Origin: Euprymna scolopes
Taxonomy: Eukaryota
Assembly: GCA_053919585.1 (NCBI GenBank)
Contig: CM132793.1
Reading direction: 5' to 3' (one strand)
DNA length: 64,000 bases
Each line of letters begins with the position of its first letter. Within the stretch, counting starts at the first letter, position 1. Positions 16,501 through 41,180 of the stretch are shown piece after piece. The notes beneath the pieces are model-generated. The model was not told the DNA's origin, ran no database searches, and saw only the letters and a program-made list of their open reading frames with translations. Both the position numbers and the translations under genes were made by a program.

Positions 16501-17154
16501 CAGATAATACATTTGAATAGATAAATAACTGATCAATATTACATCGAGTTGCCGTCTTTCCTTCAAGCATTAAAATTTCACAATTGTTTCATTGTGTTTT
16601 TGCCCATTTTGCTTTTTATAATGAAAATCACCTCAAAATAAAAAGTTTCCATCGCTGAAGCAGTACAAGCAATTTTTGTCCAATCAGAATTGCAATTGAG
16701 AACATTTTTACTGGAGTTTAGTACCGAGTCTCTTTTGACCTGGAATTTAAGCCATGGTTGTTATTAAGTGAAAATGACACATTCTTGTGAGGATGTGGAC
16801 AATCAGTCCAACCCGCCCTATTAACCCTACCCCTAACCCTAACCCCACTTTATTAATCGTTTACGCACAAAAATGCAATTCATCGCCGCAGAACAAAATT
16901 GTCATTTGGAACAATTCATTAATACCCGAACCGTGCCTAAACAATGATTCCGACCTTATAACATTGACATGTTATATATGGTCAAATTTGTTTTGAAGAC
17001 GTTTAACTTAATTTGAACTTTACTTTTTCAATTTTGTTTTTATTTCATATTATTTCTACTTCTGTTTAGTTCTTTATTTGTTTTCATATTATTATTTTTA
17101 CTAGTAGGGCTACAGTAGGGGGAAAATTGTAACATATTTCTATTAAAAATAGAT

Positions 17155-17243
17155 GTAAGAAAATTATCAAAAAAAAAACTGGAACAGAATGTTCAGTGTT
17201 GCCATTCAACTATTAGAACTATTTAAATAACATCACTTTATAT
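17155..17243 (+). mobile_element. Short Tc1 transposase fragment, same family as 22715-22805
   Basis: gtaagaaaattatcaaaa...cagaatgttca.tgtt...caactattagaa.ctatttaaataa is shared with the HTH region of the Tc1 copy at 22.7 kb. Confidence 0.65.
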
Positions 17244-17244
17244 A

Positions 17245-17247
<3 letters not shown>

Positions 17248-17316
<69 letters not shown>
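17248..17316. repeat. (CT)n microsatellite
   Basis: Visible directly in the sequence. Confidence 0.95.
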
Positions 17317-20075: not shown

Positions 20076-22479
20076 AAATTCTTTACAGCAGTATAATTAT
20101 AAAAATTGTTGAAAATACGCTTAAAACCTTAGAAGCTATTAATATTAAAAAGGGCATATAAATAAAATTACATTGAATACACGCAAGAATATTCTGAATA
20201 TCTATTATTACAACTAATACCTGTGACATTTACATTAGTTGCAGAATTGTGTAATGAAAACATATGTCATTGTAGTAATAGAAAACTCTAAAATCATATA
20301 CTATACCTTCTCTAAATTCTAGCCCAGTCTATTTATACTAAACTAGTATTGAAATTGTTTTCGTCTTAAACTTTTTCCTATGCATGTTTTTGCGTAAGTA
20401 ATTAAGTTGTATATCCTAGAGTATATGCTTTATTTTTTAAATAATATTGATATTTATAACACATATAGACAAATTATAATGTTACAAGAGATTCTGATAT
20501 TTTTAAGTAAATGCTTTACGTATCAAAGGATCAAATATATAATGTCTGCTTAATTCAATATATGGCTGAACAATTCGACCAAATGCTTATGTTGTAAAGA
20601 AAAGACGATGTATTTGCTTGGCAGAATCCGCTGACCTTGTAAATTTGTTTGATTATCGAATTTTATTTTTCCAAAATGGCTGCTGTGTTGAACATATCAG
20701 CATGTCCTCCCAATCGTTAGAGAGAAAGAGTCAATACGCGAAAAGTAAGATGGAACATCATCGATAAAAGCCAACACAAGTTATATTGAGATGAGATGAG
20801 AAGTAATGAGACGAAAGATAAAAGTGCGAGAGTATACTGGAATGAAGAAGTACAGTTGGATATTTCTATAAAAAAACGGAGAGATATACAAATTGAAATA
20901 GAACAAATGAATAAGAAAGAAAAAGAAACGAAGAAGACATTAATCGAAAATGAAATCAGAAAGTAAAAATGAGAATTAATAATATAGAAACATATCCAAA
21001 ATATGTTTTTGATAAAAAGAAAGATAAAATCATAAAAATACACACATTACTCGTATAAAACGCACGAATATATGTGCATGTGTTTAAAAAGAAATTGTCA
21101 TCTATATTTTTATTAATAAAGATAAATTTATGCAAATTTTTAACTTTATATTAAAATTATTTTTTTAATATTGTATTAAATAAAATTCGTCGTGTGTAAC
21201 AATTATGTTCATTGTAACAAACACTTTTAGATAGTTTTATTTTTTTAAATGCACCTATAAAAGGCGATCAATTTGATTTGTGCATATAAAATCTAATACA
21301 AAATAATNNNNNNNNNNNNNNNNNNNNNNNNNNNNNNNNNNNNNNNNNNNNNNNNNNNNNNNNNNNNNNNNNNNNNNNNNNNNNNNNNNNNNNNNNNNNN
21401 NNNNNNNNNNNNNNNNNNNNNNNNNNNNNNNNNNNNNNNNNNNNNNNNNNNNNNNNNNNNNNNNNNNNNAATTATGTTCATTGTAATAAACAAGTTTAGA
21501 TAGTTTTATTTTTTAAATGCACCTATAAAAGGCGATCAATTTGATTTGTGCATATAAAATCTAATACAAAATAATAATAATNNNNNNNNNNNNNNNNNNN
21601 NNNNNNNNNNNNNNNNNNNNNNNNNNNNNNNNNNNNNNNNNNNNNNNNNNNNNNNNNNNNNNNNNNNNNNNNNNNNNNNNNNNNNNNNNNNNNNNNNNNN
21701 NNNNNNNNNNNNNNNNNNNNNNNATTATTATTTATATTATTATTANNNNNNNNNNNNNNNNNNNNNNNNNNNNNNNNNNNNNNNNNNNNNNNNNNNNNNN
21801 NNNNNNNNNNNNNNNNNNNNNNNNNNNNNNNNNNNNNNNNNNNNNNNNNNNNNNNNNNNNNNNNNNNNNNNNNNNNNNNNNNNNNNNNNNNNNNNNNNNN
21901 NNNNNNNNNNNNNNNNNNNNNNNNNNNNNNNNNNNNNNNNNNNNNNNNNNNNNNNNNNNNNNNNNNNNNNNNNNNNNNNNNNNNNNNNNNNNNNNNATTA
22001 TTATTATTATTTATATTATTATTTATATTATAATTATNNNNNNNNNNNNNNNNNNNNNNNNNNNNNNNNNNNNNNNNNNNNNNNNNNNNNNNNNNNNNNN
22101 NNNNNNNNNNNNNNNNNNNNNNNNNNNNNNNNNNNNNNNNNNNNNNNNNNNNNNNNNNNNNNNNNNNNNNNNNNNNNNNNNNNNNNNNNNNNNNNNNNNN
22201 NNNNNNNNNNNNNNNNNNNNNNNNNNNNNNNNNNNNNNNNNNNNNNNNNNNNNNNNNNNNNNNNNNNNNNNNNNNNNNNNNNNNNNNNNNNNNNNNNNNN
22301 NNNNNNNNNNNNNNNNNNNNNNNNNNNNNNNNNNNNNNNNNNNNNNNNNNNNNNNNNNNNNNNNNNNNNNNNNNNNNNNNNNNNNNNNNNNNNNNNNNNN
22401 NNNNNNNNNNNNNNNNNNNNNNNNNNNNNNNNNNNNNNNNNNNNNNNNNNNNNNNNNNNNNNNNNNNNNNNNNCAATAC

Positions 22480-23319
22480 TTAACATTATTCTGATTTAGT
22501 TAAAGGTAAAAGTATCTGCATTAAAACGACCAGAAAATCATTGAGAATTTTTTCAAGATTTCTAGAAATTCTATTTTCTATTGTTCAAAAAGTATAAGGA
22601 AAGATTAAAAATATGGCATCACCAGTCACTTAGGTGAAAATGTAAGAGCAAAAATCTGATAAGTAAAGAGGTATTTTTTAAACAAGGAAAGCTTTGCTGA
22701 TACTTTCTAATCATGTAAGAAAATTATCAAAAGAAACTAGAACGACAGAATGTTCAATGTTCCTGTCCAACTATTAGAAACTATTTAAATAATAGCAGTT
22801 TTATATTCGGCTTGAGGCCAACAAGAAATAGATAAAATGCCAGAGGATAAAATTAAAAACATGTGAATGTGGTGAATCGAAATTTAATTTCTATAATTCT
22901 GATGGAAACAAAGAAATATGGCAAAAGAAAGGTGACGAGCTAAATAAAATGAATGTTTGCGGAACTGTAAAATTTGAAAGAAGGTCTGTTATGTTTTTGT
23001 TGTTGTTGTTTTTGTTTTGTTTTTTTTGTTGTTGTTGTTCGTATTATGCTGTCGCATAATTAGTTTTTATATGGAAATGGAAGCAGCCGATTACGACAAC
23101 ATGCTAAGTTCTTCATTGTTTAATTTTGTTAGAAAATTAGCTACATTTTCCAGGACAACAACCCCAAAACACATTAGCAAAGCTTGCAAACAATTATTTT
23201 TAAAGAAAATTAGATAACCATTGGAAGATGTTCGGCATAACCACCGGATTCCAACTCCATAAAAAAATTGTGGTAATAATAAAATCGGAATTGGCATTAA
23301 AATGTTTTTAAAAAAAGAC
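22480..23319 (+). pseudogene. Tc1-type (DD34E-like) transposase pseudogene, 5' part
   Basis: HTH-like KSLRIFSRFLEILFSIVQKV and CPTIRNYL. GESKFNFYNSDGNKEIWQKKGDEL...TVKFERRSVMFL from 22871 (consensus SDESKF..SDG..VWR..TVKHGGGSVMVW). YIFQDNNPK-HISK at ~23142. CSA*PPDSNSIKKLW at 23229-23273 (consensus WPAQSPDLNPIENLW). Confidence 0.85.
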
Positions 23320-26300
23320 GACCTCAAAACATCCGACCTCAGAACAGCCAACCTCAGAATAGCCGACCTCAGAACAGCCGACCTCAGAACAGCCGACCTC
23401 AGAACAGCCAAGCTCAGAACAGCCAAGCTCAGAACAGCCAAGCTCAGAACAGCCGACCTCAAAACAGTCGACCTCAGAACAGCCGACCTCAGAACAGCCA
23501 AGCTCAGAACAGCCAAGCTCAGAACAGCCGACCTCAAAACAGTCGACCTCAGAACAGCCGAGCTCAAAACAGCCGAGCTCAGAACAGCCGACCTCAGAAC
23601 AGCCGACCTCAAAACAGCCGACCTCAAAACAGCTGACCTCAGAACAGCCGACCTCAAAACAGCCGACCTCAGACCAGCCGACCTCAGAACAGCCGACCTC
23701 AGAACAGCCGAGCTCAAAACAGCCGACCTCAGAACAGCCGACCTCAGAACAGCCGACCTCAGAACAGCCGACCTCAAAACAGCCGACCTCAGAACAGCCG
23801 ACCTCAAAACAGCCGACCTCAAAACAGCCGACCTCAAAACAGCCGACCTCAGACCAGCCAACCTCAGAACAGCCGACCTCAAAACAGCCGACCTCAGAAC
23901 AGCCGACCTCAGAACAGCCGACCTCAGAACAGCCGACCTCAAAACAGCCGACCTCAGAACAGCCGACCTCAGAACAGCCGACCTCAAAACAGCCGACCTC
24001 AGAACAGCCGACCTCAAAACAGCCGACCTCAGAACAGCCGACCTCAAAACAGCCGACCTCAAAACAGCCGACCTCAGAACAGCCGACCTCAGAACAGCCG
24101 ACCTCAAAACAGCCGACCTCAAAACAGCCGACCTCAGAACAGCCGACCTCAGAACAGCCGACCTCAAAACAGCCGACCTCAAAACAGCCGACCTCAGAAC
24201 AGCCGACCTCAACACAGCCGACCTCAGAACAGGCGACCTCAAAACAGCCGACCTCAGAACAGCCGACCTCAGAACAGCCGACCTCAAAACAGCCGACCTC
24301 AGAACAGTGACCTCAAAACAGCCGACCTCAGAACAGCCGACCTCAAAACAGCCGACCTCAGAACAGCCGACCTCAAAACAGCCGACCTCAGAACAGCCGA
24401 CCTCAGAACAACCGACCTCAAAACAGCTGACCTCAGAACAGCCGACCTCAAAACAGCCGACCTCAAAACAGCCGACCTCAAAACAGCCGACCTCAAAACA
24501 GCCGACCTCAGAACAGCCGACCTCAAAACAGCCGACCTCAGAACAGCCGACCTCAAAACAGCCGACCTCAGAACAGCCGACCTCAGAACAGCCGACCTCA
24601 AAACAGCCGACCTAAGAACAGCCGACCTCAAAACAGCCGACCTCAAAACAGCTGACCTCAGAACAGCCGACCTCAAAACAGCCGACCTCAGAACAGCCGA
24701 CCTCAGAACAGCCAACCTCAAAACAGCCGACCTCAGAACAGCCGACCTCAAAACAGCCGACCTCAGAACAGCCGACCTCAAAACAGCCGACCTCAAAACA
24801 GCCGACCTCAGACCAGCCAACCTCAAAACAGCCGACCTCAGAACAGCCGACCTCAAAACAGCCGACCTCAGAACAGCCGACCTCAGAACAGCCGACCTCA
24901 GAACAGCCGACCTCAAAACAGCCGACCTCAGAACAGCCGACCTCAGAACAGCCGACCTCAAAACAGCCGACCTCAGAACAGCCGACCTCAAAACAGCCGA
25001 CCTCAGAACAGCCGACCTCAAAACAGCCGACCTCAAAACAGCCGACCTCAGAACAGCCGACCTCAGAACAGCCGACCTCAAAACAGCCGACCTCAAAACA
25101 GCCGACCTCAGAACAGCCGACCTCAAAAAAGCCGACCTCAAAACAGCCGACCTCAGAACAGCCGACCTCAAAACAGCCGACCTCAGAACAGGCGACCTCA
25201 GAACAGCCGACCTCAGAACAGCCGACCTCAGAACAGCCGACCTCAAAACAGCCGACCTCAGAACAGTGACCTCAAAACAGCCGACCTCAGAACAGCTGAC
25301 CTCAAAACAGCCGACCTCAGAACAGCCGACCTCAAAACAGCCGACCTCAGAACAGCCGACCTCAGAACAACCGACCTCAAAACAGCTGACCTCAGAACAG
25401 CCGACCTCAAAACAGCCGACCTCAAAACAGCTGACCTCAGAACAGCCGACCTCAAAACAGCCGACCTAGAAACAGCCGACCTCAGACCAGCCGACCTCAA
25501 AACAGCCGACCTCAGAACAGCCGACCTCAAAACAGCCGACCTCAGAACAGCCGACCTCAGAACAGCCGACCTCAAAACAGCCGACCTAAGAACAGCCGAC
25601 CTCAAAACAGCCGACCTCAAAACAGCTGACCTCAGAACAGCCGACCTCAAAACAGCCGACCTCAGAACAGCCGACCTCAGAACAGCCAACCTCAAAACAG
25701 CCGACCTCAGAACAGCCGACCTCAAAACAGCCGACCTCAGAACAGCCGACCTCAAAACATCCGACCTCAGAACAGCCGACCTCAGAATAGCCGACCTCAA
25801 AACAGCCGACCTCAGAAGAGCCGCCCTCAGAACAGCCGACCTCAGAACAGCCAAGCTAAGAACAGCCAAGCTCAGAACAGCCGACCTCAAAACAGTCGAC
25901 CTCAGAACAGCCGACCTCAAAACAGCCGAGCTCAGAACAGCCGACCTCAGAACAGCCGACCTCAGAACAGCCGACCTCAAAACAGCCGACCTCAGAACAG
26001 CCGACCTCAAAACAGCCGACCTCAGAACAGCCGACCTCAGTACAGCCAACCTCAAAACAGCCGACCTCAGAACAGCCGACCTCAAAACAGCCGACCTCAG
26101 AACAGCCGACCTCAAAACAGCCGACCTCAGAACAGCTGACCTCAGAATAGCCGACCTCAAAACAGCCGACCTCAGAACAGCCGACCTCAAACCACCCGAC
26201 CTCAGAACAGCCAAGCTCAGAACAGCCAAGCTCAGAACAGCCGACCTCAAAACAGTCGACCTCAGAACAGCCGACCTCAGAACAGCTGACCTCAGAACAG

Positions 26301-29300
26301 CCGACCTCAGAACAGCCGACCTCAAAACAGCCGACCTCAGAACAGCCGACCTCAAAACAGCCGACCTAGAAACAGCCGACCTCAAAACAGCCGACCTAGA
26401 AACAGCCGACCTCAGACCAGCCGACCTCAAAACAGCCGACCTCAGAACAGCCGACCTCAAAACAGCCGACCTCAGAACAGCCGACCTCAGAACAGCCGAC
26501 CTCAAAACAGCCGACCTAAGAACAGCCGACCTCAAAACAGCCGACCTCAAAACAGCTGACCTCAGAACAGCCGACCTCAAAACAGCCGACCTCAGAACAG
26601 CCGACCTCAGAACAGCCAACCTCAAAACAGCCGACCTCAGAACAGCCGACCTCAAAACAGCCGACCTCAGAACAGCCGACCTCAAAACATCCGACCTCAG
26701 AACAGCCGACCTCAGAATAGCCGACCTCAAAACAGCCGACCTCAGAAGAGCCGCCCTCAGAAGAGCCGACCTCAGAACAGCCAAGCTAAGAACAGCCAAG
26801 CTCAGAACAGCCGACCTCAAAACAGTCGACCTCAGAACAGCCGACCTCAAAACAGCCGAGCTCAGAACAGCCGACCTCAGAACAGCCGACCTCAAAACAG
26901 TCTACCTCAAAACAGCCGACCTCAGAACAGCCGACCTCAAAACAGCCGACCTCAGAACAGCCGACCTCAGTACAGCCAACCTCAAAACAGCCGACCTCAG
27001 AACAGCCGACCTCAAAACAGCCGACCTCAGAACAGCCGACCTCAAAACAGCCGACCTCAGAACAGCCGACCTCAGAATAGCCGACCTCAAAACAGCCGAC
27101 CTCAGAACAGCCGACCTCAAACCACCCGACCTCAGAACAGCCAAGCTCAGAACAGCCAAGCTCAGAACAGCCGACCTCAAAACAGTCGACCTCAGAACAG
27201 CCGACCTCAAAACAGCCGAGCTCAGAACAGCCGACCTCAGAACAGCCGACCTCAAAACAGCCGACCTCAGAACAGCTGACCTCAGAACAGCCAACCTCAA
27301 AACAGCCGACCTCAGACCAGCCGACCTCAAAACAGCCGACCTCAGAACAGCCGACCTCAGAACAGCCGACCTCAGAACAACCGACCTCAAAACAGCCGAC
27401 CTCAAAACAGCCGACCTCAGAACAGCCGACCTCAGAACAGCCGACCTCAAAACAGCCGACCTCAAAACAGCCGACCTCAAAACAGCCGACCTCAGACCAG
27501 CCGACCTCAAAACAGCCGACCTCAGAACAGCCGACCTCAAAACAGCCGACCTCAGAACAGCCGACCTCAGAACAGCCGACCTCAGAACAGCCGACCTCAA
27601 AACAGCCAACCTCAGAACAGCCGACCTCAGAACAGCCGACCTCAAAACAGCCGACCTCAGAACAGCCGACCTCAAAACAGCCGACTTCAGAACAGCCGAC
27701 CTCAAAACAGCCGACCTCAAAACAGCCGACCTCAGAACAGCCGACCTCAGAACAGCCGACCTCAAAACAGCCGACCTCAAAACAGCCGACCTCAGAACAG
27801 CCGACCTCAGAACAGCCGACCTCAAAACAGCCGACCTCAAAACAGCCGACCTCAGAACAGCCGACCTCAGAACAGCCGACCTCAAAACAGCCGACCTCAA
27901 AATACCGACCTCAGAACAGCCGACCTCAAAATAGCCGACCTCAGAACAGCCGACCTCAAAACAGCCGACCTCAGAACAGCCGACCTCAGAACAGCCGACC
28001 TCAGAACAGCCGACCTCAAAACAGCCGACCTCAGAACAGTGACCTCAAAACAGCCGACCTCAGAACAGCCGACCTCAAAACAGCCGACCTCAGAACAGCC
28101 GACCTCAAAACAGCCGACCTCAGAACAGCCGACCTCAGAACAGCCGACCTCAAAACAGCTGACCTCAGAACAGCCGACCTCAAAACAGCCGACCTCAAAA
28201 CAGCCGACCTCAGAACAGCCGACCTCAAAACAGCTGACGTCAGAAAAGCCGACCTCAAAACAGCCGACCTCAAAACAGCCGACCTCAGAACAGCCGACCT
28301 CAGAACAGCCGACCTCAAAACAGCCGACCTTAGAACAGCCGACCTCAGAACAGCCGACCTCAAAACAGCCGACCTCAAAACAGCCGACCTCAGAACAGCC
28401 GACCTCAGAACAGCCGACCTCAGAACAGCCGACCTCAAAACAGCCGACCTCAGAACAGTAACCTCAAAACAGCCGACCTCAGAACAGCCGACCTCAAAAC
28501 AGCCGACCTCAGAACAGCCGAGCTCAAAACAGCCGACCTCAGAACAGCCGACCTCAGAACAGCCGACCTCAAAACAGCTGACCTCAGAACAGCCGACCTC
28601 AAAACAGCCGACCTCAAAACAGCCGACCTCAGAACAGCCGACCTCAAAACAGCCGACCTCAGAAAAGCCGACCTCAAAACAGCCGACCTCAAAACAGCCG
28701 ACCTCAGAACAGCCGACCTCAGAACAGCCGACCTCAAAACAGCCGACCTTAGAACAGCCGACCTCAGAACAGCCGACCTCAAAACAGCCGACCTCAAAAC
28801 AGCCGACCTCAAAACAGCCGACCTCAGACTAGCCGACCTCAAAACAGCCGACCTCAGAACAGCCGACCTCAGACCAGCCAACCTCAAAACAGCCGACCTC
28901 AGAACAGCCGACCTCAAAACAGCCGACCTCAGAACAGCCGACCTCAGAACAGCCGACCTCAGAACAGCCGACCTCAAAACAGCCGACCTCAGAACAGCCG
29001 ACCTCAGAACAGCCGACCTCAAAACAGCCGACCTCAGAACAGCCGACCTCAAAACAGCCGACCTCAGAACAGCCGACCTCAAAACAGCCGACCTCAAAAC
29101 AGCCGACCTCAGAACAGCCGACCTCAGAACAGCCGACCTCAAAACAGCCGACCTCAAAACAGCCGACCTCAGAACAGCCGACCTCAGAACAGCCGACCTC
29201 AAAAAAGCCGACCTCAAAACAGCCGACCTCAGAACAGCCGACCTCAAAACAGCCGACCTCAGAACAGGCTACCTCAGAACAGCCGACCTCAGAACAGCCG

Positions 29301-32300
29301 ACCTCAGAACAGCCGACCTCAAAACAGCCGACCTCAGAACAGTGACCTCAAAACAGCCGACCTCAGAACAGCCGACCTCAAAACAGCCGACCTCAGAACA
29401 GCCGACCTCAAAACAGCCGACCTCAGAACAGCCGACCTCAGAACAACCGACCTCAAAACAGCTGACCTCAGAACAGCCGACCTCAAAACAGCCGACCTCA
29501 AAACAGCCGACCTCAGAACAGCCGACCTCAAAACAGCCGACCTAGAAACAGCCGACCTCAGACCAGCCGACCTCAAAACAGCCGACCTCAGAACAGCCGA
29601 CCTCAAAACAGCCGACCTCAGAACAGCCGACCTCAGAACAGCCGACCTCAAAACAGCCGACCTAAGAACAGCCGACCTCAAAACAGCCGACCTCAAAACA
29701 GCCGACCTCAGAACAGCCGACCTCAAAACAGCCGACCTCAGAACAGCCGACCTCAGAACAGCCGACCTCAAAACAGCCGACCTCAGAACAGCCGACCTCA
29801 AAACAGCCGACCTCAGAACAGCCGACCTCAGTACAGCCAACCTCAAAACAGCCGACCTCAGAACAGCCGACCCCAAAACAGCCGACCTCAGAACAGCCGA
29901 CCTCAAAACAGCCGACCTCAGAACAGCCGACCTCAGAATAGCCGACCTCAAAACAGCCGACCTCAGAACAGCCGACCTCAAACCACCCGACCTCAGAACA
30001 GCCAAGCTCAGAACAGCCAAGCTCAGAACAGCCGACCTCAAAACAGTCGACCTCAGAACAGCCGACCTCAGAACAGCTGACCTCAGAACAGCCGACCTCA
30101 GAACAGCCGACCTCAAAACAGCCGACCTCAGAACAGCCGACCTCAAAACAGCCGACCTAGAAACAGCCGACCTCAGACCAGCCGACCTCAAAACAGCCGA
30201 CCTCAGAACAGCCGACCTCAAAACAGCCGACCTCAGAACAGCCGACCTCAGAACAGCCGACCTCAAAACAGCCGACCTAAGAACAGCCGACCTCAAAACA
30301 GCCGACCTCAAAACAGCTGACCTCAGAACAGCCGACCTCAAAACAGCCGACCTCAGAACAGCCGACCTCAGAACAGCCAACCTCAAAACAGCCGACCTCA
30401 GAACAGCCGACCTGAAAACAGCCGACCTCAGAACAGCCGACCTCAAAACATCCGACCTCAGAACAGCCGACCTCAGAATAGCCGACCTCAAAACAGCCGA
30501 CCTCAGAAGAGCCGCCCTCAGAACAGCCGACCTCAGAACAGCCAAGCTAAGAACAGCCAAGCTCAGAACAGCCGACCTCAAAACAGTCGACCTCAGAACA
30601 GCCGACCTCAAAACAGCCGAGCTCAGAACAGCCGACCTCAGAACAGCCGACCTCAGAACAGCCGACCTCAAAACAGCCGACCTCAGAACAGCCGACCTCA
30701 AAACAGCCGACCTCAGAACAGCCGACCTCAGTACAGCCAACCTCAAAACAGCCGACCTCAGAACAGCCGACCTCAAAACAGCCGACCTCAGAACAGCCGA
30801 CCTCAAAACAGCCGACCTCAGAACAGCCGACCTCAGAATAGCCGACCTCAAAACAGCCGACCTCAGAACAGCCGACCTCAAACCACCCGACCTCAGAACA
30901 GCCAAGCTCAGAACAGCCAAGCTCAGAACAGCCGACCTCAAAACAGTCGACCTCAGAACAGCCGACCTCAAAACAGCCGAGCTCAGAACAGCCGACCTCA
31001 GAACAGCCGACCTCAAAACAGCCGACCTCAGAACAGCCGACCTCAGAACAGCCAACCTCAAAACAGCCGACCTCAGACCAGCCGACCTCAAAACAGCCGA
31101 CCTCAGAACAGCCGACCTCAGAACAGCCGACCTCAGAACAGCCGACCTCAGAACAACCGACCTCAAAACAGCCGACCTCAAAACAGCCGACCTCAGAACA
31201 GCCGACCTCAGAACAGCCGACCTCAAAACAGCCGACCTCAAAACAGCCGACCTCAGACCAGCCGACCTCAAAACAGCCGACCTCAGAACAGCCGACCTCA
31301 AAACAGCCGACCTCAGAACAGCCGACCTCAGAACAGCCGACCTCAGAACAGCCGACCTCAAAACAGCCAACCTCAGAACAGCCGACCTCAGAACAGCCGA
31401 CCTCAAAACAGCCGACCTCAGAACAGCCGACCTCAAAACAGCCGACTTCAGAACAGCCGACCTCAAAACAGCCGACCTCAAAACAGCCGACCTCAGAACA
31501 GCCGACCTCAGAACAGCCGACCTCAAAACAGCCGACCTCAAAACAGCCGACCTCAGAACAGCCGACCTCAGAACAGCCGACCTCAGAACAGCCGACCTCA
31601 AAACAGCCGACCTCAAAATACCGACCTCAGAACAGCCGACCTCAAAATAGCCGACCTCAGAAAAGCCGACCTCAAAACAGCCGACCTCAGAACAGCCGAC
31701 CTCAGAACAGCCGACCTCAAAACAGCCGACCTCAGAACAGTGACCTCAAAACAGCCGACCTCAGAACAGCCGACCTCAAAACAGCCGACCTCAGAACAGC
31801 CGACCTCAAAACAGCCGACCTCAGAACAGCCGACCTCAGAACAGCCGACCTCAAAACAGCTGACCTCAGAACAGCCGACCTCAAAACAGCCGACCTCAAA
31901 ACAGCCGACCTCAGAACAGCCGACCTCAAAACAGCCGACCTCAGAAAAGCCGACCTCAAAACAGCCGACCTCAAAACAGCCGACCTCAGAACAGCCGACC
32001 TCAGAACAGCCGACCTCAAAACAGCCGACCTTAGAACAGCCGACCTCAGAACAGCCGACCTCAAAACAGCCGACCTCAAAACAGCCGACCTCAGAACAGC
32101 CGACCTCAGAACAGCCGACCTCAGAACAGCCGACCTCAAAACAGCCGACCTCAGAACAGTGACCTCAAAACAGCCGACCTCAGAACAGCCGACCTCAAAA
32201 CAGCCGACCTCAGAACAGCCGACCTCAAAACAGCCGACCTCAGAACAGCCGACCTCAAAACAGCTGACCTCAGAACAGCCGACCTCAAAACAGCCGACCT

Positions 32301-35300
32301 CAAAACAGCCGACCTCAGAACAGCCGACCTCAAAACAGCCGACCTCAGAAAAGCCGACCTCAAAACAGCCGACCTCAAAACAGCCGACCTCAGAACAGCC
32401 GACCTCAGAACAGCCGACCTTAGAACAGCCGACCTCAGAACAGCCGACCTCAAAACAGCCGACCTCAAAACAGCCGACCTCAAAACAGCCGACCTCAGAC
32501 TAGCCGACCTCAAAACAGCCGACCTCAGAACAGCCGACCTCAAAACAGCCGACCTCAGAACAGCCGACCTCAGAACAGCCGACCTCAGAACAGCCGACCT
32601 CAAAACAGCCGAGCTCAGAACAGCCGACCTCAGAACAGCCGACCTCAGAACAGCCGACCTCAAAACAGCCGACCTCAGAACAGCCGACCTCAAAACAGCC
32701 GACCTCAGAACAGCCGACCTCAGTACAGCCAACCTCAAAACAGCCGACCTCAGAACAGCCGACCTCAAAACAGCCGACCTCAGAACAGCCGACCTCAAAA
32801 CAGCCGACCTCAGAACAGCCGACCTCAGAATAGCCGACCTCAAAACAGCCGACCTCAGAACAGCCGACCTCAAACCACCCGACCTCAGAACAGCCAAGCT
32901 CAGAACAGCCAAGCTCAGAACAGCCGACCTCAAAACAGTCGACCTCAGAACAGCCGACCTCAAAACAGCCGAGCTCAGAACAGCCGACCTCAGAACAGCC
33001 GACCTCAAAACAGCCGACCTCAGAACAGCTGACCTCAGAACAGCCAACCTCAAAACAGCCGACCTCAGACCAGCCGACCTCAAAACAGCCGACCTCAGAA
33101 CAGCCGACCTCAGAACAGCCGACCTCAGAACAGCCGACCTCAGAACAACCGACCTCAAAACAGCCGACCTCAAAACAGCCGACCTCAGAACAGCCGACCT
33201 CAGAACAGCCGACCTCAAAACAGCCGACCTCAAAACAGCCGACCTCAGACCAGCCGACCTCAAAACAGCCGACCTCAGAACAGCCGACCTCAAAACAGCC
33301 GACCTCAGAACAGCCGACCTCAGAACAGCCGACCTCAGAACAGCCGACCTCAAAACAGCCAACCTCAGAACAGCCGACCTCAGAACAGCCGACCTCAAAA
33401 CAGCCGACCTCAGAACAGCCGACCTCAAAACAGCCGACTTCAGAACAGCCGACCTCAAAACAGCCGACCTCAAAACAGCCGACCTCAGAACAGCCGACCT
33501 CAGAACAGCCGACCTCAAAACAGCCGACCTCAAAACAGCCGACCTCAGAACAGCCGACCTCAGAACAGCCGACCTCAAAAGAGCCGACCTCAAAACAGCC
33601 GACCTCAGAACAGCCGACCTCAGAACAGCCGACCTCAAAACAGCCGACCTCAAAATACCGACCTCAGAACAGCCGACCTCAAAATAGCCGACCTCAGAAC
33701 AGCCGACCTCAAAACAGCCGACCTCAGAACAGCCGACCTCAGAACAGCCGACCTCAAAACAGCCGACCTCAGAACAGTGACCTCAAAACAGCCGACCTCA
33801 GAACAGCCGACCTCAAAACAGCCGACCTCAGAACAGCCGACCTCAAAACAGCCGACCTCAGAACAGCCGACCTCAGAACAGCCGACCTCAAAACAGCTGA
33901 CCTCAGAACAGCCGACCTCAAAACAGCCGACCTCAAAACAGCCGACCTCAGAACAGCCGACCTCAAAACAGCCGACCTCAGAAAAGCCGACCTCAAAACA
34001 GCCGACCTCAAAACAGCCGACCTCAGAACAGCCGACCTCAGAACAGCCGACCTCAAAACAGCCGACCTTAGAACAGCCGACCTCAGAACAGCCGACCTCA
34101 AAACAGCCGACCTCAAAACAGCCGACCTCAGAACAGCCGACCTCAAAACAGCCGACCTCAGAACAGCCGACCTCAGAACAGCCGACCTCAAAACAGCCGA
34201 CCTCAGAACAGCCGACCTCAAAACAGCCGACCTCAGAACAGCCGACCTCAGAATAGCCGACCTCAAAACAGCCGACCTCAGAACAGCCGACCTCAAACCA
34301 CCCGACCTCAGAACAGCCAAGCTCAGAACAGCCAAGCTCAGAACAGCCGACCTCAAAACAGTCGACCTCAGAACAGCCGACCTCAGAACAGCTGACCTCA
34401 GAACAGCCGACCTCAGAACAGCCGACCTCAAAACAGCCGACCTCAGAACAGCCGACCTCAAAACAGCCGACCTAGAAACAGCCGACCTTAGACCAGCCGA
34501 CCTCAAAACAGCCGACCTCAGAACAGCCGACCTCAAAACAGCCGACCTCAGAACAGCCGACCTCAGAACAGCCGACCTCAAAACAGCCGACCTAAGAACA
34601 GCCGACCTCAAAACAGCCGACCTCAAAACAGCTGACCTCAGAACAGCCGACCTCAAAACAGCCGACCTCAGAACAGCCGACCTCAGAACAGCCAACCTCA
34701 AAACAGCCGACCTCAGAACAGCCGACCTCAAAACAGCCGACCTCAGAACAGCCGACCTCAAAACATCCGACCTCAGAACAGCCGACCTCAGAATAGCCGA
34801 CCTCAAAACAGCCGACCTCAGAAGAGCCGCCCTCAGAACAGCCGACCTCAGAACAGCCAAGCTAAGAACAGCCAAGCTCAGAACAGCCGACCTCAAAACA
34901 GTCGACCTCAGAACAGCCGACCTCAAAACAGCCGAGCTCAGAACAGCCGACCTCAGAACAGCCGACCTCAGAACAGCCGACCTCAAAACAGCCGACCTCA
35001 GAACAGCCGACCTCAAAACAGCCGACCTCAGAACAGCCGACCTCAGTACAGCCAACCTCAAAACAGCCGACCTCAGAACAGCCGACCTCAAAACAGCCGA
35101 CCTCAGAACAGCCGACCTCAAAACAGCCGACCTCAGAACAGCCGACCTCAGAATAGCCGACCTCAAAACAGCCGACCTCAGAACAGCCGACCTCAAACCA
35201 CCCGACCTCAGAACAGCCAAGCTCAGAACAGCCAAGCCCAGAACAGCCGACCTCAAAACAGTCGACCTCAGAACAGCCGACCTCAAAACAGCCGAGCTCA

Positions 35301-38300
35301 GAACAGCCGACCTCAGAACAGCCGACCTCAAAACAGCCGACCTCAGAACAGCTTACCTCAGAACAGCCAACCTCAAAACAGCCGACCTCAGACCAGCCGA
35401 CCTCAAAACAGCCGACCTCAGAACAGCCGACCTCAGAACAGCCGACCTCAGAACAACCGACCTCAAAACAGCCGACCTCAAAACAGCCGACCTCAGAACA
35501 GCCGACCTCAGAACAGCCGACCTCAAAACAGCCGACCTCAAAACAACCGACCTCAGACCAGCCGACCTCAAAACAGCCGACCTCAGAACAGCCGACCTCA
35601 AAACAGCCGACCTCAGAACAGCCGACCTCAGAACAGCCGACCTCAGAACAGCCGACCTCAAAACAGCCAACCTCAGAACAGCCGACCTCAGAACAGCCGA
35701 CCTCAAAACAGCCGACCTCAGAACAGCCGACCTCAAGACAGCCGACTTCAGAACAGCCGACCTCAAAACAGCCGACCTCAAAACAGCCGACCTCAGAACA
35801 GCCGACCTCAGAACAGCCGACCTCAAAACAGCCGACCTCAAAACAGCCGACCTCAGAACAGCCGACCTCAGAACAGCCGACCTCAGAACAGCCGACCTCA
35901 AAACAGCCGACCTCAAAATACCGACCTCAGAACAGCCGACCTCAAAATAGCCGACCTCAGAACAGCCGACCTCAAAACAGCCGACCTCAGAACAGCCGAC
36001 CTCAGAACAGCCGACCTCAAAACAGCCGACCTCAGAACAGTGACCTCAAAACAGCCGACCTCAGAACAGCCGACCTCAAAACAGCCGACCTCAGAACAGC
36101 CGACCTCAAAACAGCCGACCTCAGAACAGCCGACCTCAGAACAGCCGACCTCAAAACAGCTGACCTCAGAACAGCCGACCTCAAAACAGCCGACCTCAAA
36201 ACAGCCGACCTCAGAACAGCCGACCTCAAAACAGCCGACCTCAGAAAAGCCGACCTCAAAACAGCCGACCTCAAAACAGCCGACCTCAGAACAGCCGACC
36301 TCAGAACAGCCGACCTCAAAACAGCCGACCTTAGAACAGCCGACCTCAGAACAGCCGACCTCAAAACAGCCGACCTCAAAACAGCCGACCTCAGAACAGC
36401 CGACCTCAGAACAGCCGACCTCAGAACAGCCGACCTCAAAACAGCCGACCTCAGAACAGTGACCTCAAAACAGCCGACCTCAGAACAGCCGACCTCAAAA
36501 CAGCCGACCTCAGAACAGCCGACCTCAAAACAGCCGACCTCAGAACAGCCGACCTCAAAACAGCTGACCTCAGAACAGCCGACCTCAAAACAGCCGACCT
36601 CAAAACAGCCGACCTCAGAACAGCCGACCTCAAAACAGCCGACCTCAGAAAAGCCGACCTCAAAACAGCCGACCTCAAAACAGCCGACCTCAGAACAGCC
36701 GACCTCAGAACAGCCGACCTCAAAACAGCCGACCTTAGAACAGCCGACCTCAGAACAGCCGACCTCAAAACAGCCGACCTCAAAACAGCCGACCTCAAAA
36801 CAGCCGACCTCAGACTAGCCGACCTCAAAACAGCCGACCTCAGAACAGCCGACCTCAAAACAGCCGACCTCAGAACAGCCGACCTCAGAACAGCCGACCT
36901 CAGAACAGCCGACCTCAAAACAGCCGAGCTCAGAACAGCCGACCTCAGAACAGCCGACCTCAGAACAGCCGACCTCAAAACAGCCGACCTCAGAACAGCC
37001 GACCTCAAAACAGCCGACCTCAGAACAGCCGACCTCAGTACAGCCAACCTCAAAACAGCCGACCTCAGAACAGCCGACCTCAAAACAGCCGACCTCAGAA
37101 CAGCCGACCTCAAAACAGCCGACCTCAGAACAGCCGACCTCAGAATAGCCGACCTCAAAACAGCCGACCTCAGAACAGCCGACCTCAAACCACCCGACCT
37201 CAGAACAGCCAAGCTCAGAACAGCCAAGCTCAGAACAGCCGACCTCAAAACAGTCGACCTCAGAACAGCCGACCTCAAAACAGCCGAGCTCAGAACAGCC
37301 GACCTCAGAACAGCCGACCTCAAAACAGCCGACCTCAGAACAGCTGACCTCAGAACAGCCAACCTCAAAACAGCCGACCTCAGACCAGCCGACCTCAAAA
37401 CAGCCGACCTCAGAACAGCCGACCTCAGAACAGCCGACCTCAGAACAGCCGACCTCAGAACAACCGACCTAAAAACAGCCGACCTCAAAACAGCCGACCT
37501 CAGAACAGCCGACCTCAGAACAGCCGACCTCAAAACAGCCGACCTCAAAACAGCCGACCTCAGACCAGCCGACCTCAAAACAGCCGACCTCAGAACAGCC
37601 GACCTCAAAACAGCCGACCTCAGAACAGCCGACCTCAGAACAGCCGACCTCAGAACAGCCGACCTCAAAACAGCCAACCTCAGAACAGCCGACCTCAGAA
37701 CAGCCGACCTCAAAACAGCCGACCTCAGAACAGCCGACCTCAAAACAGCCGACTTCAGAACAGCCGACCTCAAAACAGCCGACCTCAAAACAGCCGACCT
37801 CAGAACAGCCGACCTCAGAACACCCGACCTCAAAACAGCCGACCTCAAAACAGCCGACCTCAGAACAGCCGACCTCAGAACAGCCGACCTCAAAAGAGCC
37901 GACCTCAAAACAGCCGACCTCAGAACAGCCGACCTCAGAACAGCCGACCTCAAAACAGCCGACCTCAAAATACCGACCTCAGAACAGCCGACCTCAAAAT
38001 AGCCGACCTCAGAACAGCCGACCTCAAAACAGCCGACCTCAGAACAGCCGACCTCAGAACAGCCGACCTCAAAACAGCCGACCTCAGAACAGTGACCTCA
38101 AAACAGCCGACCTCAGAACAGCCGACCTCAAAACAGCCGACCTCAGAACAGCCGACCTCAAAACAGCCGACCTCAGAACAGCCGACCTCAGAACAGCCGA
38201 CCTCAAAACAGCTGACCTCAGAACAGCCGACCTCAAAACAGCCGACCTCAAAACAGCCGACCTCAGAACAGCCGACCTCAAAACAGCCGACCTCAGAAAA

Positions 38301-40756
38301 GCCGACCTCAAAACAGCCGACCTCAAAACAGCCGACCTCAGAACAGCCGACCTCAGAACAGCCGACCTCAAAACAGCCGACCTTAGAACAGCCGACCTCA
38401 GAACAGCCGACCTCAAAACAGCCGACCTCAAAACAGCCGACCTCAGAACAGCCGACCTCAGAACAGCCGACCTCAGAACAGCCGACCTCAAAACAGCCGA
38501 CCTCAGAACAGTGACCTCAAAACAGCCGACCTCAGAACAGCCGACCTCAAAACAGCCGACCTCAGAACAGCCGACCTCAAAACAGCCGACCTCAGAACAG
38601 CCGACCTCAAAACAGCTGACCTCAGAACAGCCGACCTCAAAACAGCCGACCTCAAAACAGCCGACCTCAGAACAGCCGACCTCAAAACAGCCGACCTCAG
38701 AAAAGCCGACCTCAAAACAGCCGACCTCAAAACAGCCGACCTCAGAACAGCCGACCTCAGAACAGCCGACCTCAAAACAGCCGACCTTAGAACAGCCGAC
38801 CTCAGAACAGCCGACCTCAAAACAGCCGACCTCAAAACAGCCGACCTCAAAACAGCCGACCTCAGACTAGCCGACCTCAAAACAGCCGACCTCAGAACAG
38901 CCGACCTCAAAACAGCCGACCTCAGAACAGCCGACCTCAGAACAGCCGACCTCAGAACAGCCGACCTCAAAACAGCCGACCTCAGAACAGCCGACCTCAG
39001 AACAGCCGACCTCAGAACAGCCGACCTCAAAACAGCCGACCTCAAAACAGCCGACCTCAGAACAGCCGACCTCAGAACAGCCGACCTCAGAACAGCCGAC
39101 CTCAGAACAGCCGACCTCAAAACAGCCGACCTCAGAACAGCCGACCTCAAAACAGCCGACCTCAAAACAGCCGACCTCAGAACAGCCGACCTCAAAACAG
39201 CCGACCTCAAAACAGCCGACCTCAGAACAGCCGACCTCAGAACAGCCGACCTCAAAACAGCCGACCTCAAAACAGCCGACCTCAAAACAGCCGACCTCAG
39301 AACAGCCGACCTCAAAACAGCCGACCTCAAAACAGCCGACCTCAAAACAGCCGACCTCAGAACAGCCGACCTCAAAACAGCCGACCTCAGAACAGCCCTC
39401 AAAACAGCCGACCTCAGAACAGCCGGCCTCAGAACAGCCGACCTCAAAACAGCCGACCTAAGAACAGCCGACCTCAAAACAGCCGACCTCAGAACAGTCG
39501 ACCTCAAAACAGCCGACCTCAGAACAGCCGACCTCAAAACAGCCGACCTCAGAACAGCCGACCTCAGAACAGCCGACCTCAGAACAGCCGACCTCAAAAC
39601 AGCCGACCTCAGAACAGCCGACCTCAGAACAGCCGACCTCAAAACAGCCGACCTCAAAACAGCCGACCTCAGACCAGCCGACCTCAAAACAGCCGACCTC
39701 AGAACAGCCGACCTCAAAACAGCCGACCTCAGAACAGCCGACCTCAGAACAGCCGACCTCAAAACAGCCGACCTCAAAACAGCCGACCTCAGAACAGCCG
39801 ACCTCAAAACAGCCGACCTCAAAACAGCCGACCTCAAAACAGCCGACCTCAGAACAGCCGACCTCAAAACAGCCGACCTCAGAACAGCCGACCTCAAAAC
39901 AGCCGACCTCAGAACAGCCGACCTCACAACAGCCGACCTCAAAACAGCCGACCTCAGAACAGCCGACCTCAAAACAGCCGACCTCAGAACAGCCGACCTC
40001 AGAACAGCCGACCTCAAAACAGCCGACCTCAAAACAGCCGACCTCAAAACAGCCGACCTCAGAACAGCCGACCTCAAAACAGCCGACCTCAAAACAGCCG
40101 ACCTCAAAACAGCCGACCTCAGAACAGCCGACCTCAAAACAGCCGACCTCAGAACAGCCCTCAAAACAGCCGACCTCAGAACAGCCGGCCTCAGAACAGC
40201 CGACCTCAAAACAGCCGACCTAAGAACAGCCGACCTCAAAACAGCCGACCTCAGAACAGTCGACCTCAAAACAGCCGACCTCAGAACAGCCGACCTCAAA
40301 ACAGCCGACCTCAGAACAGCCGACCTCAGAACAGCCGACCTCAGAACAGCCGACCTCAGAACAGCCGACCTCAGAACAGCCGACCTCAAAACAGCCGACC
40401 TCAAAACAGCCGACCTCAGACCAGCCGACCTCAAAACAGCCGACCTCAGAACAGCCGACCTCAGAACAGCCGACCTCAGAACAGCCGACCTCAGAACAGC
40501 CGACCTCAAAACAGCCGACCTCAAAACAGCCGACCTCAGAACAGCCGACCTCAAAACAGCCGACCTCAAAACAGCCGACCTCAAAACAGCCGACCTCAGA
40601 ACAGCCGACCTCAAAACAGCCGACCTCAGAACAGCCGACCTCAAAACAGCCGACCTCAGAACAGCCGACCTCAGAACAGCCGACCTCAAAACAGCCGACC
40701 TCAGAACAGCCGACCTCAAAACAGCCGACCTCAAAACAGCCGACCTCAGAACAGCC
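23320..40756. repeat. 15-bp tandem satellite, ~1160 units (GACCTCAAAACAGCC / GACCTCAGAACAGCC), with higher-order repeats
   Basis: Visible directly; 17437 bp long. The unit equals the transposase codons D-L-K-T-A. Confidence 0.99.
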
Positions 40757-41180
40757 ATAAATGAAGAATGGAATAATAGAATAGTGGATTTACACCAAAA
40801 ACTTGTTTTGTCATTCAAGAAGAGAGTGTATATGTTGTATAAAGCTAGAAATAGTTATAGGAATAAATATATTGTTAGTATAAATTCTTTTGACATATAA
40901 ATTAGTATATAATTTTCTGACATATTGACAAATATATATTTTTATTTAATTCTTCATTAAATTACTAATTATGAGAAAATAAAAACTTGAATTGAATTTT
41001 AAAAATCAATATTTAATTCGGTCAAGTTAATTTGTCTTTTTATAACATAATTATGCATCTCGCTTCTTTAAAGAAAATATTTGTTCCGACTAAGATGACT
41101 GTTAAAATGGGACATTTTTCATTATTGACCAAAAACAGCAGCTGTTTACGACCTTACAAAATATTTGTCAACAGCTTACG
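40757..41180 (+). pseudogene. Tc1-type transposase pseudogene, 3' part, with possible right TIR
   Basis: In register with the last unit: (TA)INEEWNNRIVDLHQKLVLSFKKRVYMLYKARNS, stop at 40898-40900. This matches the Tc1 C-terminus (AI.EEW..I......KLV.SM..RV..V.KAKG). Possible TIR caaaatatttgtcaacagct at ~41157-41176. Confidence 0.8.

What the first reader, a model, noticed from the sequence alone, without database searches (positions are those of the whole stretch)
22480..41180. A 17.4-kb satellite born in place from five codons of a Tc1 transposase
Seen: the array is bracketed by the two halves of one decayed Tc1-type transposase. Upstream are the DESKF/SDG, TVK..SVM, FQDN.PKH and PD.N.I..LW motifs, ending AAA GAC|GAC CTC AAA ACA. 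Directly after the last unit the frame continues ACA GCC|ATA AAT GAA GAA TGG...KLVLSFKKRVYMLYKAR. Collapsing the array to one unit gives KKDDLKTAINEEW. Established: this is the usual helix after the catalytic Glu in Tc1 transposases. Inference: the 15-mer GACCTCAAAACAGCC was part of the transposase CDS and was amplified ~1160-fold at this locus. The host element is heavily decayed while the array is highly homogeneous, so expansion or homogenisation is much younger than the insertion. Both junctions to the parent sequence are preserved to the nucleotide, giving a clear snapshot of a TE-to-satellite transition.
Basis: partly seen in the sequence, partly recalled or inferred. Interest (0 to 1): 0.85.

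Follow-up and report, generated by a model that had tools for sequence, protein, structure and literature searches.

The report
Minisatellite born inside dead Tc1 transposon
A 15-base piece of a dead Tc1 "jumping gene" has been copied head-to-tail about 1,160 times where it lay; this is a clean but not unprecedented example of how a transposon remnant turns into satellite DNA.

Summary
A 15-bp array of 1164 units fills 23320-40756. It sits between two pieces of one decayed Tc1-type transposase.

The interpretation, birth in place from five codons, is well supported:
- Collapsed to one unit, the flanks align collinearly with a near-intact Tc1 transposase (score 181; shuffles 38±5).
- One unit restores the family's LW-to-EEW spacing to within 2 nt (76 vs 78 nt).
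- The unit's codons (DLKTA) match resident codons of related elements (ELKIV, EFKAK).
- Other copies of the family in public reads join upstream-like to downstream-like sequence through one 15-nt homologue, 11/15 identical to the unit.
- Array words are abundant in the window's species, near single-copy in a taxon about 2% diverged, and not detected in one about 10% diverged.

Corrections:
- The array is not simply homogeneous. It has two interspersed main variants and 50 variants in all, and much of its length comes from kb-scale internal duplications that are 99.9-100% identical.
- Short-read depth suggests several-fold fewer copies than the assembly shows. The 17.4-kb length is therefore unconfirmed.
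- No contig bridging either array-flank junction was seen.

TE-derived satellites are a known kind, so this is a new member. Unchecked scan notes list other Tc1/mariner-born arrays elsewhere in this genome.

The parts
22474..23319 (+). Upstream part of a decayed Tc1-type transposase (HTH through the region after the catalytic Glu position). It has many stops, uses three frames and has an internal deletion. Its 5' continuation is hidden by Ns (22038-22473).
   Evidence: Motifs and frames. Collinear tblastn matches to the L001 transposase. Frameshift-tolerant score 181 against shuffles 38±5.
22719..22832 (+). Remnant of the second helix-turn-helix (…SCPTIRNYLNN…).
   Evidence: Pfam HTH_Tnp_Tc3_2, E 0.024, below the curated cut-off and weak on its own. 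It lies in the collinear position.
22874..22996 (+). Region of the first catalytic Asp (G-ESKF…SDGN…TVKFERRSVMF). The Asp itself is replaced.
   Evidence: phmmer hits to Tc1 fragments P0003 and P0004, E 7.5e-4 and 8.1e-4 against the whole library. The only PDB hit is Sleeping Beauty 5cr4 residues 43-84, E 0.55. tblastn to L001: 50% identity, E 1e-10.
22987..23039 (+). Small (TGT)n microsatellite inside the same dead reading frame: a second, minor expansion in place.
   Evidence: TRF rows at 22992-23039 and 22987-23036.
23145..23273 (+). Second catalytic Asp motif (IFQDNNPKTH) to PPDSNSIKKLW. The catalytic Glu position reads Lys.
   Evidence: PDLNPIKHLW aligns with PDSNSIKKLW.
23320..40756 (+). 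Tandem array of 1164 units of 15 bp (consensus GACCTCA[A/G]AACAGCC, which reads D-L-K/R-T-A in the transposase frame). GC is 56% and there is about one CpG per unit.
40757..40870 (+). C-terminal part of the same transposase (INEEWNN…KLVLSFKKRVYMLYKARNSYRNKY). The original stop is lost and the frame runs on to 40897. The 3' end of the element is not resolved.
   Evidence: Gapless alignment with DDE_3 C-terminal fragments P0005-P0008. tblastn across the junction, E 1e-3. Contigs of other copies fit 40752-40879.
17153..17245 (+). Second, short fragment of the same transposon family, 82% identical to 22713-22806. It shows the family is repeated in this genome.
   Evidence: blastn within the window, E 1.9e-19. 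Sequence read.

Best explanation
A Tc1-type DNA transposon inserted here and died: it has stops, frameshifts, a deletion, and Lys at the catalytic Glu position.

Long afterwards, a 15-nt stretch of its dead reading frame was duplicated in tandem. The stretch is the five codons D-L-K-T-A at the start of the helix that ends in EEW. No selection protected the frame, so the duplicate persisted.

Replication slippage and small unequal exchanges then raised the copy number. An early A-to-G change at unit position 8 became interspersed through the array. Later, unequal exchange between misaligned array segments duplicated blocks of 17-115 units over distances of 2-10 kb. That produced most of the present length.

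The array is most likely a neutral by-product with no function of its own. It does put a GC-rich, CpG-dense 17-kb block into AT-rich DNA.

Shown: the array, its exact borders, the transposase homology of both flanks, the one-unit fit, the single-copy state in other copies, and the nested near-identical blocks.
Inferred: the order of events and the molecular mechanisms (slippage, unequal exchange).
For: 1. Both flanks are one collinear Tc1 transposase.
2. The array is an exact whole number of units. The neighbouring bases are the neighbouring codons: KK-D|DLKTA|INEEW.
3. With one unit the LW-to-EEW distance is 76 nt; L001 and L002 have 78 nt. Four of five references have 25 residues between the two W.
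4. The unit is homologous to resident codons. L002 has GAA CTA AAG ATA GTA (ELKIV) at the same place, with matches mainly at codon positions 1-2. L001 has EFKAK.
5. Many contigs of other family copies, in the window's species and in a relative, begin to fit at 40734-40753 and then run on unlike the array. The loose-end consensus in X8 continues gaplessly into upstream-flank-like sequence through one homologue, GAACCAAAAGCAGCC. That 30-mer's best placement among 123,894 in the window (a tie of three) is exactly 23300-23329.
6. Nearly all units share the bases at which this copy differs from that consensus (unit positions 3, 5, 6 and 10). The seed was therefore this copy's own diverged sequence.
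7. Array word depth across runs: X1 up to about 60 times single-copy depth; X7 24-38 times for its best contig; organism B about 2 copies; organism C none laid. An X8 contig at single-copy depth fits 40734-41185 and continues 538 nt to the left without fitting the array. It is probably the orthologue without the array.
8. Blocks up to 1.7 kb are 99.9-100% identical inside the array. Other copies of the element differ from this one by 13-18%.
9. No copy of the 15-mer, allowing 2 mismatches, occurs elsewhere in the 64-kb window.
Against: - No other full copy of this exact family could be fetched and read base by base. The single-unit state rests on a 30-nt consensus (agreement 0.76) from a related species and on where contigs start to fit.
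- The second loose-end consensus (X7, two contigs) does not match without gaps (14/30).
- No listed contig from the window's own species bridges either array-flank junction, and most rows of that output were not shown.
- Short-read depth gives 24-38 copies of words that the assembly holds 226 times.
- The n-unit alignment scores differ only modestly: 172, 181, 172 and 178 for 0, 1, 2 and 3 units.
- The element's 5' end is masked and its 3' end is unresolved, so a full transposon structure (TIRs, TA duplication) is not shown.
Confidence: 0.85

Rival explanations
1. The array is real and was born in place, but the assembled length (1164 units, 17.4 kb) is wrong, or is specific to the assembled individual. 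The nearly identical kb-scale blocks could partly come from over-expansion by the assembler, or the locus could be highly length-polymorphic.
For: 31-mers that occur about 226 times in the assembled array have depth 103.9 in X7, where single-copy depth is 2.7-4.3. That is 24-38 copies. The highest X1 bin is about 60 times single copy. Blocks of 1-1.7 kb are 99.9-100% identical, which is hard for assemblers.
Against: Contig mean word depth is a poor copy-number measure, as the tool itself states. The block structure is nested and irregular with marker variants, as expected of real unequal exchange rather than a simple assembler loop. Minisatellites are commonly length-polymorphic (established knowledge).
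Confidence: 0.3
2. The minisatellite belongs to a subfamily of the transposon. An ancestral element already carried a short internal array and spread it, so several loci hold arrays of this unit and this locus is only one expansion among them.
For: Unchecked scan notes list other large arrays inside Tc1/mariner elements of this genome. MITEs of Tc1/mariner carrying internal tandem repeats are described (miDNA4 in Xenopus; PMC12628747). Genome-wide depth cannot tell one locus from several.
Against: Every contig of another copy that was listed in organisms A and C (starting to fit at 40734-40753) runs on unlike the array. Organism C has the family but no array words. The units carry this copy's private differences from the consensus of the other copies.
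Confidence: 0.08
3. A pre-existing satellite from elsewhere was inserted into, or captured by, the dead transposon. The apparent continuity of the reading frame is coincidence.
For: None found.
Against: One unit fits the family spacing. The unit is homologous, codon by codon, to related transposases and 11/15 identical to the single-copy segment in other copies. There is no foreign flank, no deletion and no target duplication at either border. The unit is absent elsewhere in the window, and the two-unit pattern is absent from metagenome contigs.
Confidence: 0.03

Closest known systems
Satellite and minisatellite DNA derived from internal segments of transposable elements (reviews PMC12628747 and PMC9659126)
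   Same: A tandem array whose unit is a piece of a TE. [quoted passage not shown] Examples are LINE ORF2, gag, the CACTA-like Jozin transposase giving the CficCl-61-40 satDNA, and 7276 TE-derived human minisatellites.
   Different: Here the unit is only 15 bp, from the coding region of a Tc1-type transposase. Both borders to the parent codons are intact. Relatives appear to show unexpanded and barely expanded states. It is a single-locus array as far as tested, not a dispersed or heterochromatic satellite family.
Tetris foldback transposon and its satellite in Drosophila virilis (PMC4079207); tandem-repeat-bearing Tc1/mariner MITE miDNA4 in Xenopus (as described in PMC12628747)
   Same: DNA-transposon sequences provide the building block of an emerging tandem array, with expansion by slippage and unequal exchange.
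   Different: In those cases the repeats lie in non-coding or TIR-proximal parts and travel with the mobile element. Here the seed is a coding segment of one immobile, decayed copy, and the other copies seen carry a single unit.
Hypervariable minisatellites with interspersed variant repeats (established knowledge, recalled rather than tested here)
   Same: A short GC-rich unit (10-60 bp), two or more variant units interspersed along the array, and probable length differences between individuals.
   Different: 17.4 kb and 1164 units would be very long. Hypervariability is only hinted at by the mismatch between read depth and the assembly.
Tc1/mariner DD34E transposases (Tc1, Sleeping Beauty; Pfam DDE_3 and HTH_Tnp_Tc3_2)
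   Same: The order and sequence of motifs in the flanks: HTH, D-E-S-K-F, TVKHGG-SVM-like, FQ-D-N-PKH, PDLNPIE-LW-like, EEW, SMPKR-like, and the TKY-like end.
   Different: This copy is dead. Pfam models do not reach significance on its stop-free pieces. No close relative is present in the protein collections searched.

Membership tests
Tc1/mariner (Tc1-like, DDE_3) transposon | Transposase with DDE catalytic-domain motifs in the canonical order | tested here: met
   Collinear matches to the near-intact Tc1 transposase of L001. Frameshift-tolerant score 181 against shuffles 38±5. Library-wide significant hits to Tc1 fragments. The C-terminus aligns with DDE_3-annotated fragments. In this copy the first Asp position reads Gly and the Glu position reads Lys.
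Tc1/mariner (Tc1-like, DDE_3) transposon | N-terminal paired-like helix-turn-helix DNA-binding domain | tested here: inconclusive
   HTH_Tnp_Tc3_2 at E 0.024, 15.4 bits against a cut-off of 31.5. Only a weak collinear tblastn match. The first part is N-masked.
Tc1/mariner (Tc1-like, DDE_3) transposon | Terminal inverted repeats flanked by a TA target duplication | not testable with these tools
   The 5' end lies in or beyond the N run at 22038-22473. The 3' end is not resolved: contigs of other copies stop fitting at about 40879, and candidate ends at about 40905 and about 41187 are guesses.
Tc1/mariner (Tc1-like, DDE_3) transposon | Multiple dispersed copies in the genome | tested here: met
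   A second fragment at 17153-17245. Many contigs 82-87% identical over 40752-40879 in runs X1, X7 and X8.
TE-derived tandem repeat born in place | Head-to-tail array whose unit is homologous to a resident segment of the TE | tested here: met
   Array. Unit against the same codons of L002 and L001, and against the single-copy segment of other copies (11/15 identical).
TE-derived tandem repeat born in place | Both array borders continue directly into the adjacent TE sequence, with nothing lost or added | tested here: met
   One unit gives 76 nt where the references have 78 nt. The alignment across the junction is gapless.
TE-derived tandem repeat born in place | Other copies of the TE, or orthologous loci, carry the unexpanded single unit | tested here: met
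   Met for other copies (contig starts and loose-end consensus). Only probable for the orthologue: the X8 contig at single-copy depth fits 40734-41185 and runs on 538 nt unlike the array. Full sequences were not seen.
Classical satellite DNA (multi-locus, heterochromatic, long arrays) | Arrays at many loci or in heterochromatin, making up a sizeable genome fraction | not tested
   Only this window could be read. No copy lies elsewhere in its 64 kb. By unit size it is a minisatellite; by array length it reaches satellite scale.

The most novel reading that the evidence does not exclude
This lineage may have a systematic tendency to turn dead Tc1/mariner copies into arrays of tens of kb. Unchecked scan notes list several such arrays in the same genome. 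This locus may offer a natural series at one orthologous site: no array in a taxon about 10% diverged, a handful of units in one about 2% diverged, and hundreds to over a thousand here. If so, satellite birth, its rate and its trigger could be measured directly. One could also ask whether something about transposase-gene remnants or local repair favours the first duplication.
Probability: 0.2. Interest if true: 0.65.

Novelty: new member of a known kind. Interest (0 to 1): 0.42.

Why it matters
The first steps of satellite birth are rarely caught, because the seed and its borders usually decay.

Here the parent codons, both borders and the layered growth history (two early variants, then nested block duplications) are all legible. 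Public reads suggest that relatives still carry the unexpanded or barely expanded state. That makes the locus a usable case for dating and measuring a TE-to-satellite transition.

Practically, the array also creates stop-free frames of up to 837 codons that can mislead gene finders. It is a 56% GC, CpG-dense island in 34% GC DNA. The general phenomenon is already established.

Tried and rejected
- Pfam on eight stop-free pieces gave nothing significant. The pieces are too short and decayed, so Pfam was not used as the main evidence.
- PDB phmmer gave only a weak Sleeping Beauty hit for one piece and an irrelevant hit for the C-terminal piece.
- The search for homologous proteins found no candidates, either with the C-terminal piece alone or embedded in the open array frame to pass the length filter. 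No close relative of this family is in that collection.
- The representative search also returned two WD40 proteins (P0001, P0002). I rejected them as summed repeat matches to the SDG..IW motif.
- The protein atlas gave only a sub-threshold DDE_3 lead, score 0.83.
- DNA blastn of the collapsed element against L001 and L002 found nothing. They are a different Tc1 family, comparable only at protein level.
- Pattern scans of metagenome contigs (two-unit pattern) and of prokaryotic genome contigs (downstream junction pattern) found nothing, as expected.
- I looked for a CpG-decay signature in the unit variants. The enrichment was only modest (pos 1 G>A 56, pos 15 C>T 29), so I make no claim.
- I looked for microhomology that could explain the first duplication. 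There is only 1 nt exact (GAC against GCC, 2 of 3), which is not convincing.
- I tried to place the 3' end of the element from TIR-like motifs of L001 and L002. The result was ambiguous.
- I considered whether the long open frames in the array encode a repeat protein. I rejected this: there is no start and the upstream frame is dead. The unit simply lacks stop codons in all three forward frames.
Full report
**1. The observation**

Tandem Repeats Finder reports a single array at 23319-40756: period 15, 1164.1 copies, 91% matches, no other period. I segmented it from 23320 against the two main consensus units, allowing indels. The result was 1164 units:
- 477 units of GACCTCAGAACAGCC and 413 of GACCTCAAAACAGCC, together 76%
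- 50 variants in all
- 21 units of 13-14 nt
- 349 edits in 17,437 nt (2.0%) from the nearer main unit

The array is 56% GC and holds 1064 CpG. The rest of the window is 34% GC.

The upstream flank begins at 22474, directly after an N run (22038-22473).

**2. Are the flanks one Tc1 transposase?**

- ESKFNFYNSDGN, 22874-22909
- TVKFERRSVMF, 22964-22996
- IFQDNNPKTH, 23145-23174
- PPDSNSIKKLW, 23241-23273
- INEEWNN...KLVLSFKKRVYMLYKARNSYRNKY, 40757-40870

Standard profile searches on the stop-free pieces are weak:
- Pfam gives only HTH_Tnp_Tc3_2 at E 0.024.
- The only PDB hit of the 75-aa piece is the Sleeping Beauty catalytic domain, at the right place but with E 0.55.

A full-library phmmer search with the 55-aa piece 22832-22996 gave two significant Tc1 fragments: P0003 (E 7.5e-4, 53% identity) and P0004 (E 8.1e-4, 49% identity). 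It also gave two WD40 proteins, which I reject as repeat artefacts.

The contigs that encode P0003 and P0004 were fetched. L001 is a 1256-bp Tc1 element with inverted ends and a transposase broken by only two stops. L002 is a second Tc1 element whose contig ends just after EEW.

I took the L001 transposase, with X at its two stops, and compared it with the window's flanks joined through one unit. tblastn gives collinear matches:
- residues 156-195, E 1e-10
- 275-284, PDLNPIKHLW against PDSNSIKKLW
- 299-342, E 1e-3

The last match crosses the junction without a gap: KKEFKAKLLEEWQKISPKLTKKLVHSMPKRLKAV... against KDDLRTAINEEWNNRIVDLHQKLVLSFKKRVYML....

My own frameshift-tolerant protein-to-DNA alignment scores 181. 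Forty shuffled proteins give 38±5 (maximum 53) and the reverse complement gives 49. The flanks are therefore two parts of one decayed Tc1-type transposase.

It is clearly dead. Three frames are used. About 100 nt appear to be missing before the first catalytic Asp, judged by eye against L001. A (TGT)n microsatellite sits in the frame at 22987-23039. The catalytic Glu position reads Lys.

**3. Does exactly one unit belong there?**

In L001 and L002 the W of ...LW and the W of EEW are 78 nt apart. Of five reference proteins, four have 25 residues between them and one has 27. In the window the distance is 76 nt with one unit, 61 with none and 91 with two. The 2-nt deficit matches the frame change seen between PPDSNSIKKLW and KKDDLKT.

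Alignment scores for 0, 1, 2 and 3 units are 172, 181, 172 and 178. One unit is best, but the margin is modest.

More telling, the unit's five codons are homologous to the resident codons of related elements:
- The window has GAC CTC AAA ACA GCC (DLKTA) followed by ATA AAT GAA GAA TGG.
- L002 has GAA CTA AAG ATA GTA (ELKIV) followed by ATG AAT GAA GAA TGG.
- L001 has EFKAK there.

An AlphaFold2 model of the DDE_3 fragment P0006 has low overall confidence (58.6), with pLDDT in the 70s for this part. It places the homologous residues in the helix that ends in EEW. That is the second helix after the catalytic Glu.

**4. Other copies of the family, and related taxa**

The family is repeated. A 93-bp fragment 82% identical to 22713-22806 lies at 17153-17245.

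Public runs holding the flanks were found:
- X1 and X7 are from the window's species (organism A).
- X3 is from organism B. It is about 2% diverged on the single-copy flank.
- X8 is from organism C. It is about 10-15% diverged.

I laid their contigs on 40300-42390 at 80% or higher likeness. Four things came out.

(a) Many contigs in A and C that are 82-87% identical to 40752-40879 begin to fit at 40734-40753. That is inside or just before the last unit. To the left they continue with sequence unlike the array.

(b) The consensus of the loose ends of four X8 contigs before 40752 is a 30-mer. Without gaps, it matches the last 20 nt of the upstream flank plus the first 10 nt of a unit at 21 of 30 positions. 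Among 123,894 placements on both strands of the window, this pre-specified place (23300-23329) is the best, tied with two others. Other copies therefore join upstream-like to downstream-like sequence through one 15-nt segment, GAACCAAAAGCAGCC, which is 11/15 identical to the unit. They have A at unit position 8, so the A variant is ancestral. Nearly all units share this copy's differences from that consensus (positions 3, 5, 6 and 10). The seed was therefore this copy's own diverged sequence. The X7 consensus, from two contigs, is A-rich and does not match without gaps (14/30).

(c) Array words differ sharply between taxa.
- In X1 the array bins reach about 60 times single-copy depth.
- In X7 the best array contig has depth 103.9, where single-copy depth is 2.7-4.3. 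That is 24-38 copies.
- In X3 there is a single 76-nt contig of five to six units holding both variants. Its depth is 5.84, where single-copy depth is 2.2-4.1. In the assembly the same words have a multiplicity of about 174.
- In X8 nothing is laid on the array.

(d) Three X8 contigs at single-copy depth (about 19) tile 40734-41185, 41189-41449 and 41541-42390. The first continues 538 nt to the left without fitting the array. It is probably the orthologous element carrying a single unit. This last point is inference from depth and tiling; the tool warns that holes prove nothing.

**5. How the array grew**

Written as a string of unit variants, the array shows the two main units interspersed. 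They alternate more than chance would give: GA 241, AG 223, GG 137, AA 86. Long marker-bearing strings recur four to five times.

The largest repeats are nearly identical:
- 32416-34138 against 36731-38453: 1723 bp, 2 differences
- 35864-36925 against 37916-38977: 1062 bp, identical
- 31114-32415 against 35414-36715: 1302 bp, 3 differences

The last 2.9 kb or so is the most uniform, with 87-88% main units.

The history is therefore layered. A short variable array formed by small events, then kb-scale unequal exchanges multiplied blocks of it very recently. 'Highly homogeneous' needs this qualification.

**6. What is not established**

- Length. Words that occur about 226 times in the assembled array appear only 24-38 times in X7 by depth, and at most about 60 times in X1. 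Contig depth is a poor measure. Even so, the gap leaves three possibilities open: length polymorphism, bias, or over-assembly of near-identical blocks.
- Junction support. No listed contig from organism A bridges 40756|40757.
- The element's ends. The 5' end is masked and the 3' end is unresolved.
- Other loci. Whether the 15-mer array occurs elsewhere in the genome could not be tested. It does not occur elsewhere in the window. The two-unit pattern was absent from metagenome contigs, and the downstream junction pattern was absent from prokaryotic genome contigs.

**7. Comparison with what is known**

Two reviews state that satellites and minisatellites arise from TE parts, including central segments of DNA transposons and TE reading frames. 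Examples include a CACTA transposase-derived satellite, LINE ORF2-derived satellites and 7276 TE-derived human minisatellites (PMC12628747; PMC9659126). Tetris (PMC4079207) and the Xenopus miDNA4 MITE are the nearest DNA-transposon cases, but there the repeats are non-coding and travel with the element.

The present case is a new member of this known kind. Its merit is resolution: parent codons, exact borders, a readable growth history, and apparently unexpanded and barely expanded states in relatives.

Unchecked notes of this scan list other arrays inside Tc1/mariner elements of the same genome. One note covers the nested repeats of this same array, which I confirmed independently. I did not test the other notes. 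They are the basis of the more novel reading that this lineage converts dead Tc1/mariner copies into large arrays unusually often.

**8. Verdict**

- Novelty: a new member of a known kind.
- Interest is moderate, 0.42.

Noticed in passing
window 17958-20072: A 2.1-kb degenerate tandem array of a 25-bp AT/GT-rich unit (periods 25, 50 and 75; 68% matches). It starts about 700 bp downstream of the second fragment of the same Tc1 family (17153-17245), which is itself followed by a (CT)40 run at 17248-17327.
   Followed up: no
window 22987-23039: A (TGT)n microsatellite has expanded inside the same dead transposase frame, just after the TVKFERRSVMF motif. It is a second, small tandem expansion in place within this element.
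   Followed up: partly
window 41840-41979: A short segment with very high contig depth in all three taxa (X1 about 430-550, X8 about 1250-1690, where single-copy depth is about 15-19). Loose ends pile up at 41890/41891 and 41924/41925. It looks like a high-copy element with a core of about 34 bp embedded in the single-copy flank.
   Followed up: no
window 40930-40999: Contig depth rises again here (X1 114, X8 175), and several contigs end or join at 40935-40950. The joints skip 40775-40940 and 40845-40944. Either another repeat lies here or other copies differ in the element's 3' region.
   Followed up: no
window 23263-24612 and 38387-40897 (+), and several minus-strand ORFs up to 771 aa: The unit lacks stop codons in all three forward frames, so the array produces open frames of 450-837 codons on the plus strand and ORFs up to 771 aa on the minus strand. 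These could be mistaken for genes encoding DLKTA, TSKQP or PQNSR repeat proteins.
   Followed up: partly
window 16806-16850: A short interstitial run of telomere-like CCCTAA-type repeats (…aaccctacccctaaccctaacccc…).
   Followed up: no
window 1602-2075 (-): An ORF with an endonuclease-reverse transcriptase domain (Pfam Exo_endo_phos_2, E 2.3e-11), probably a LINE fragment.
   Followed up: no
   Followed up: no
window 21200-21310 and 21470-21580: The same ~100-nt sequence (…aattatgttcattgtaa[c/t]aaaca…tctaatacaaaataat) occurs twice, each time just before an N run. This suggests a tandem or segmental repeat that is partly masked.
   Followed up: no
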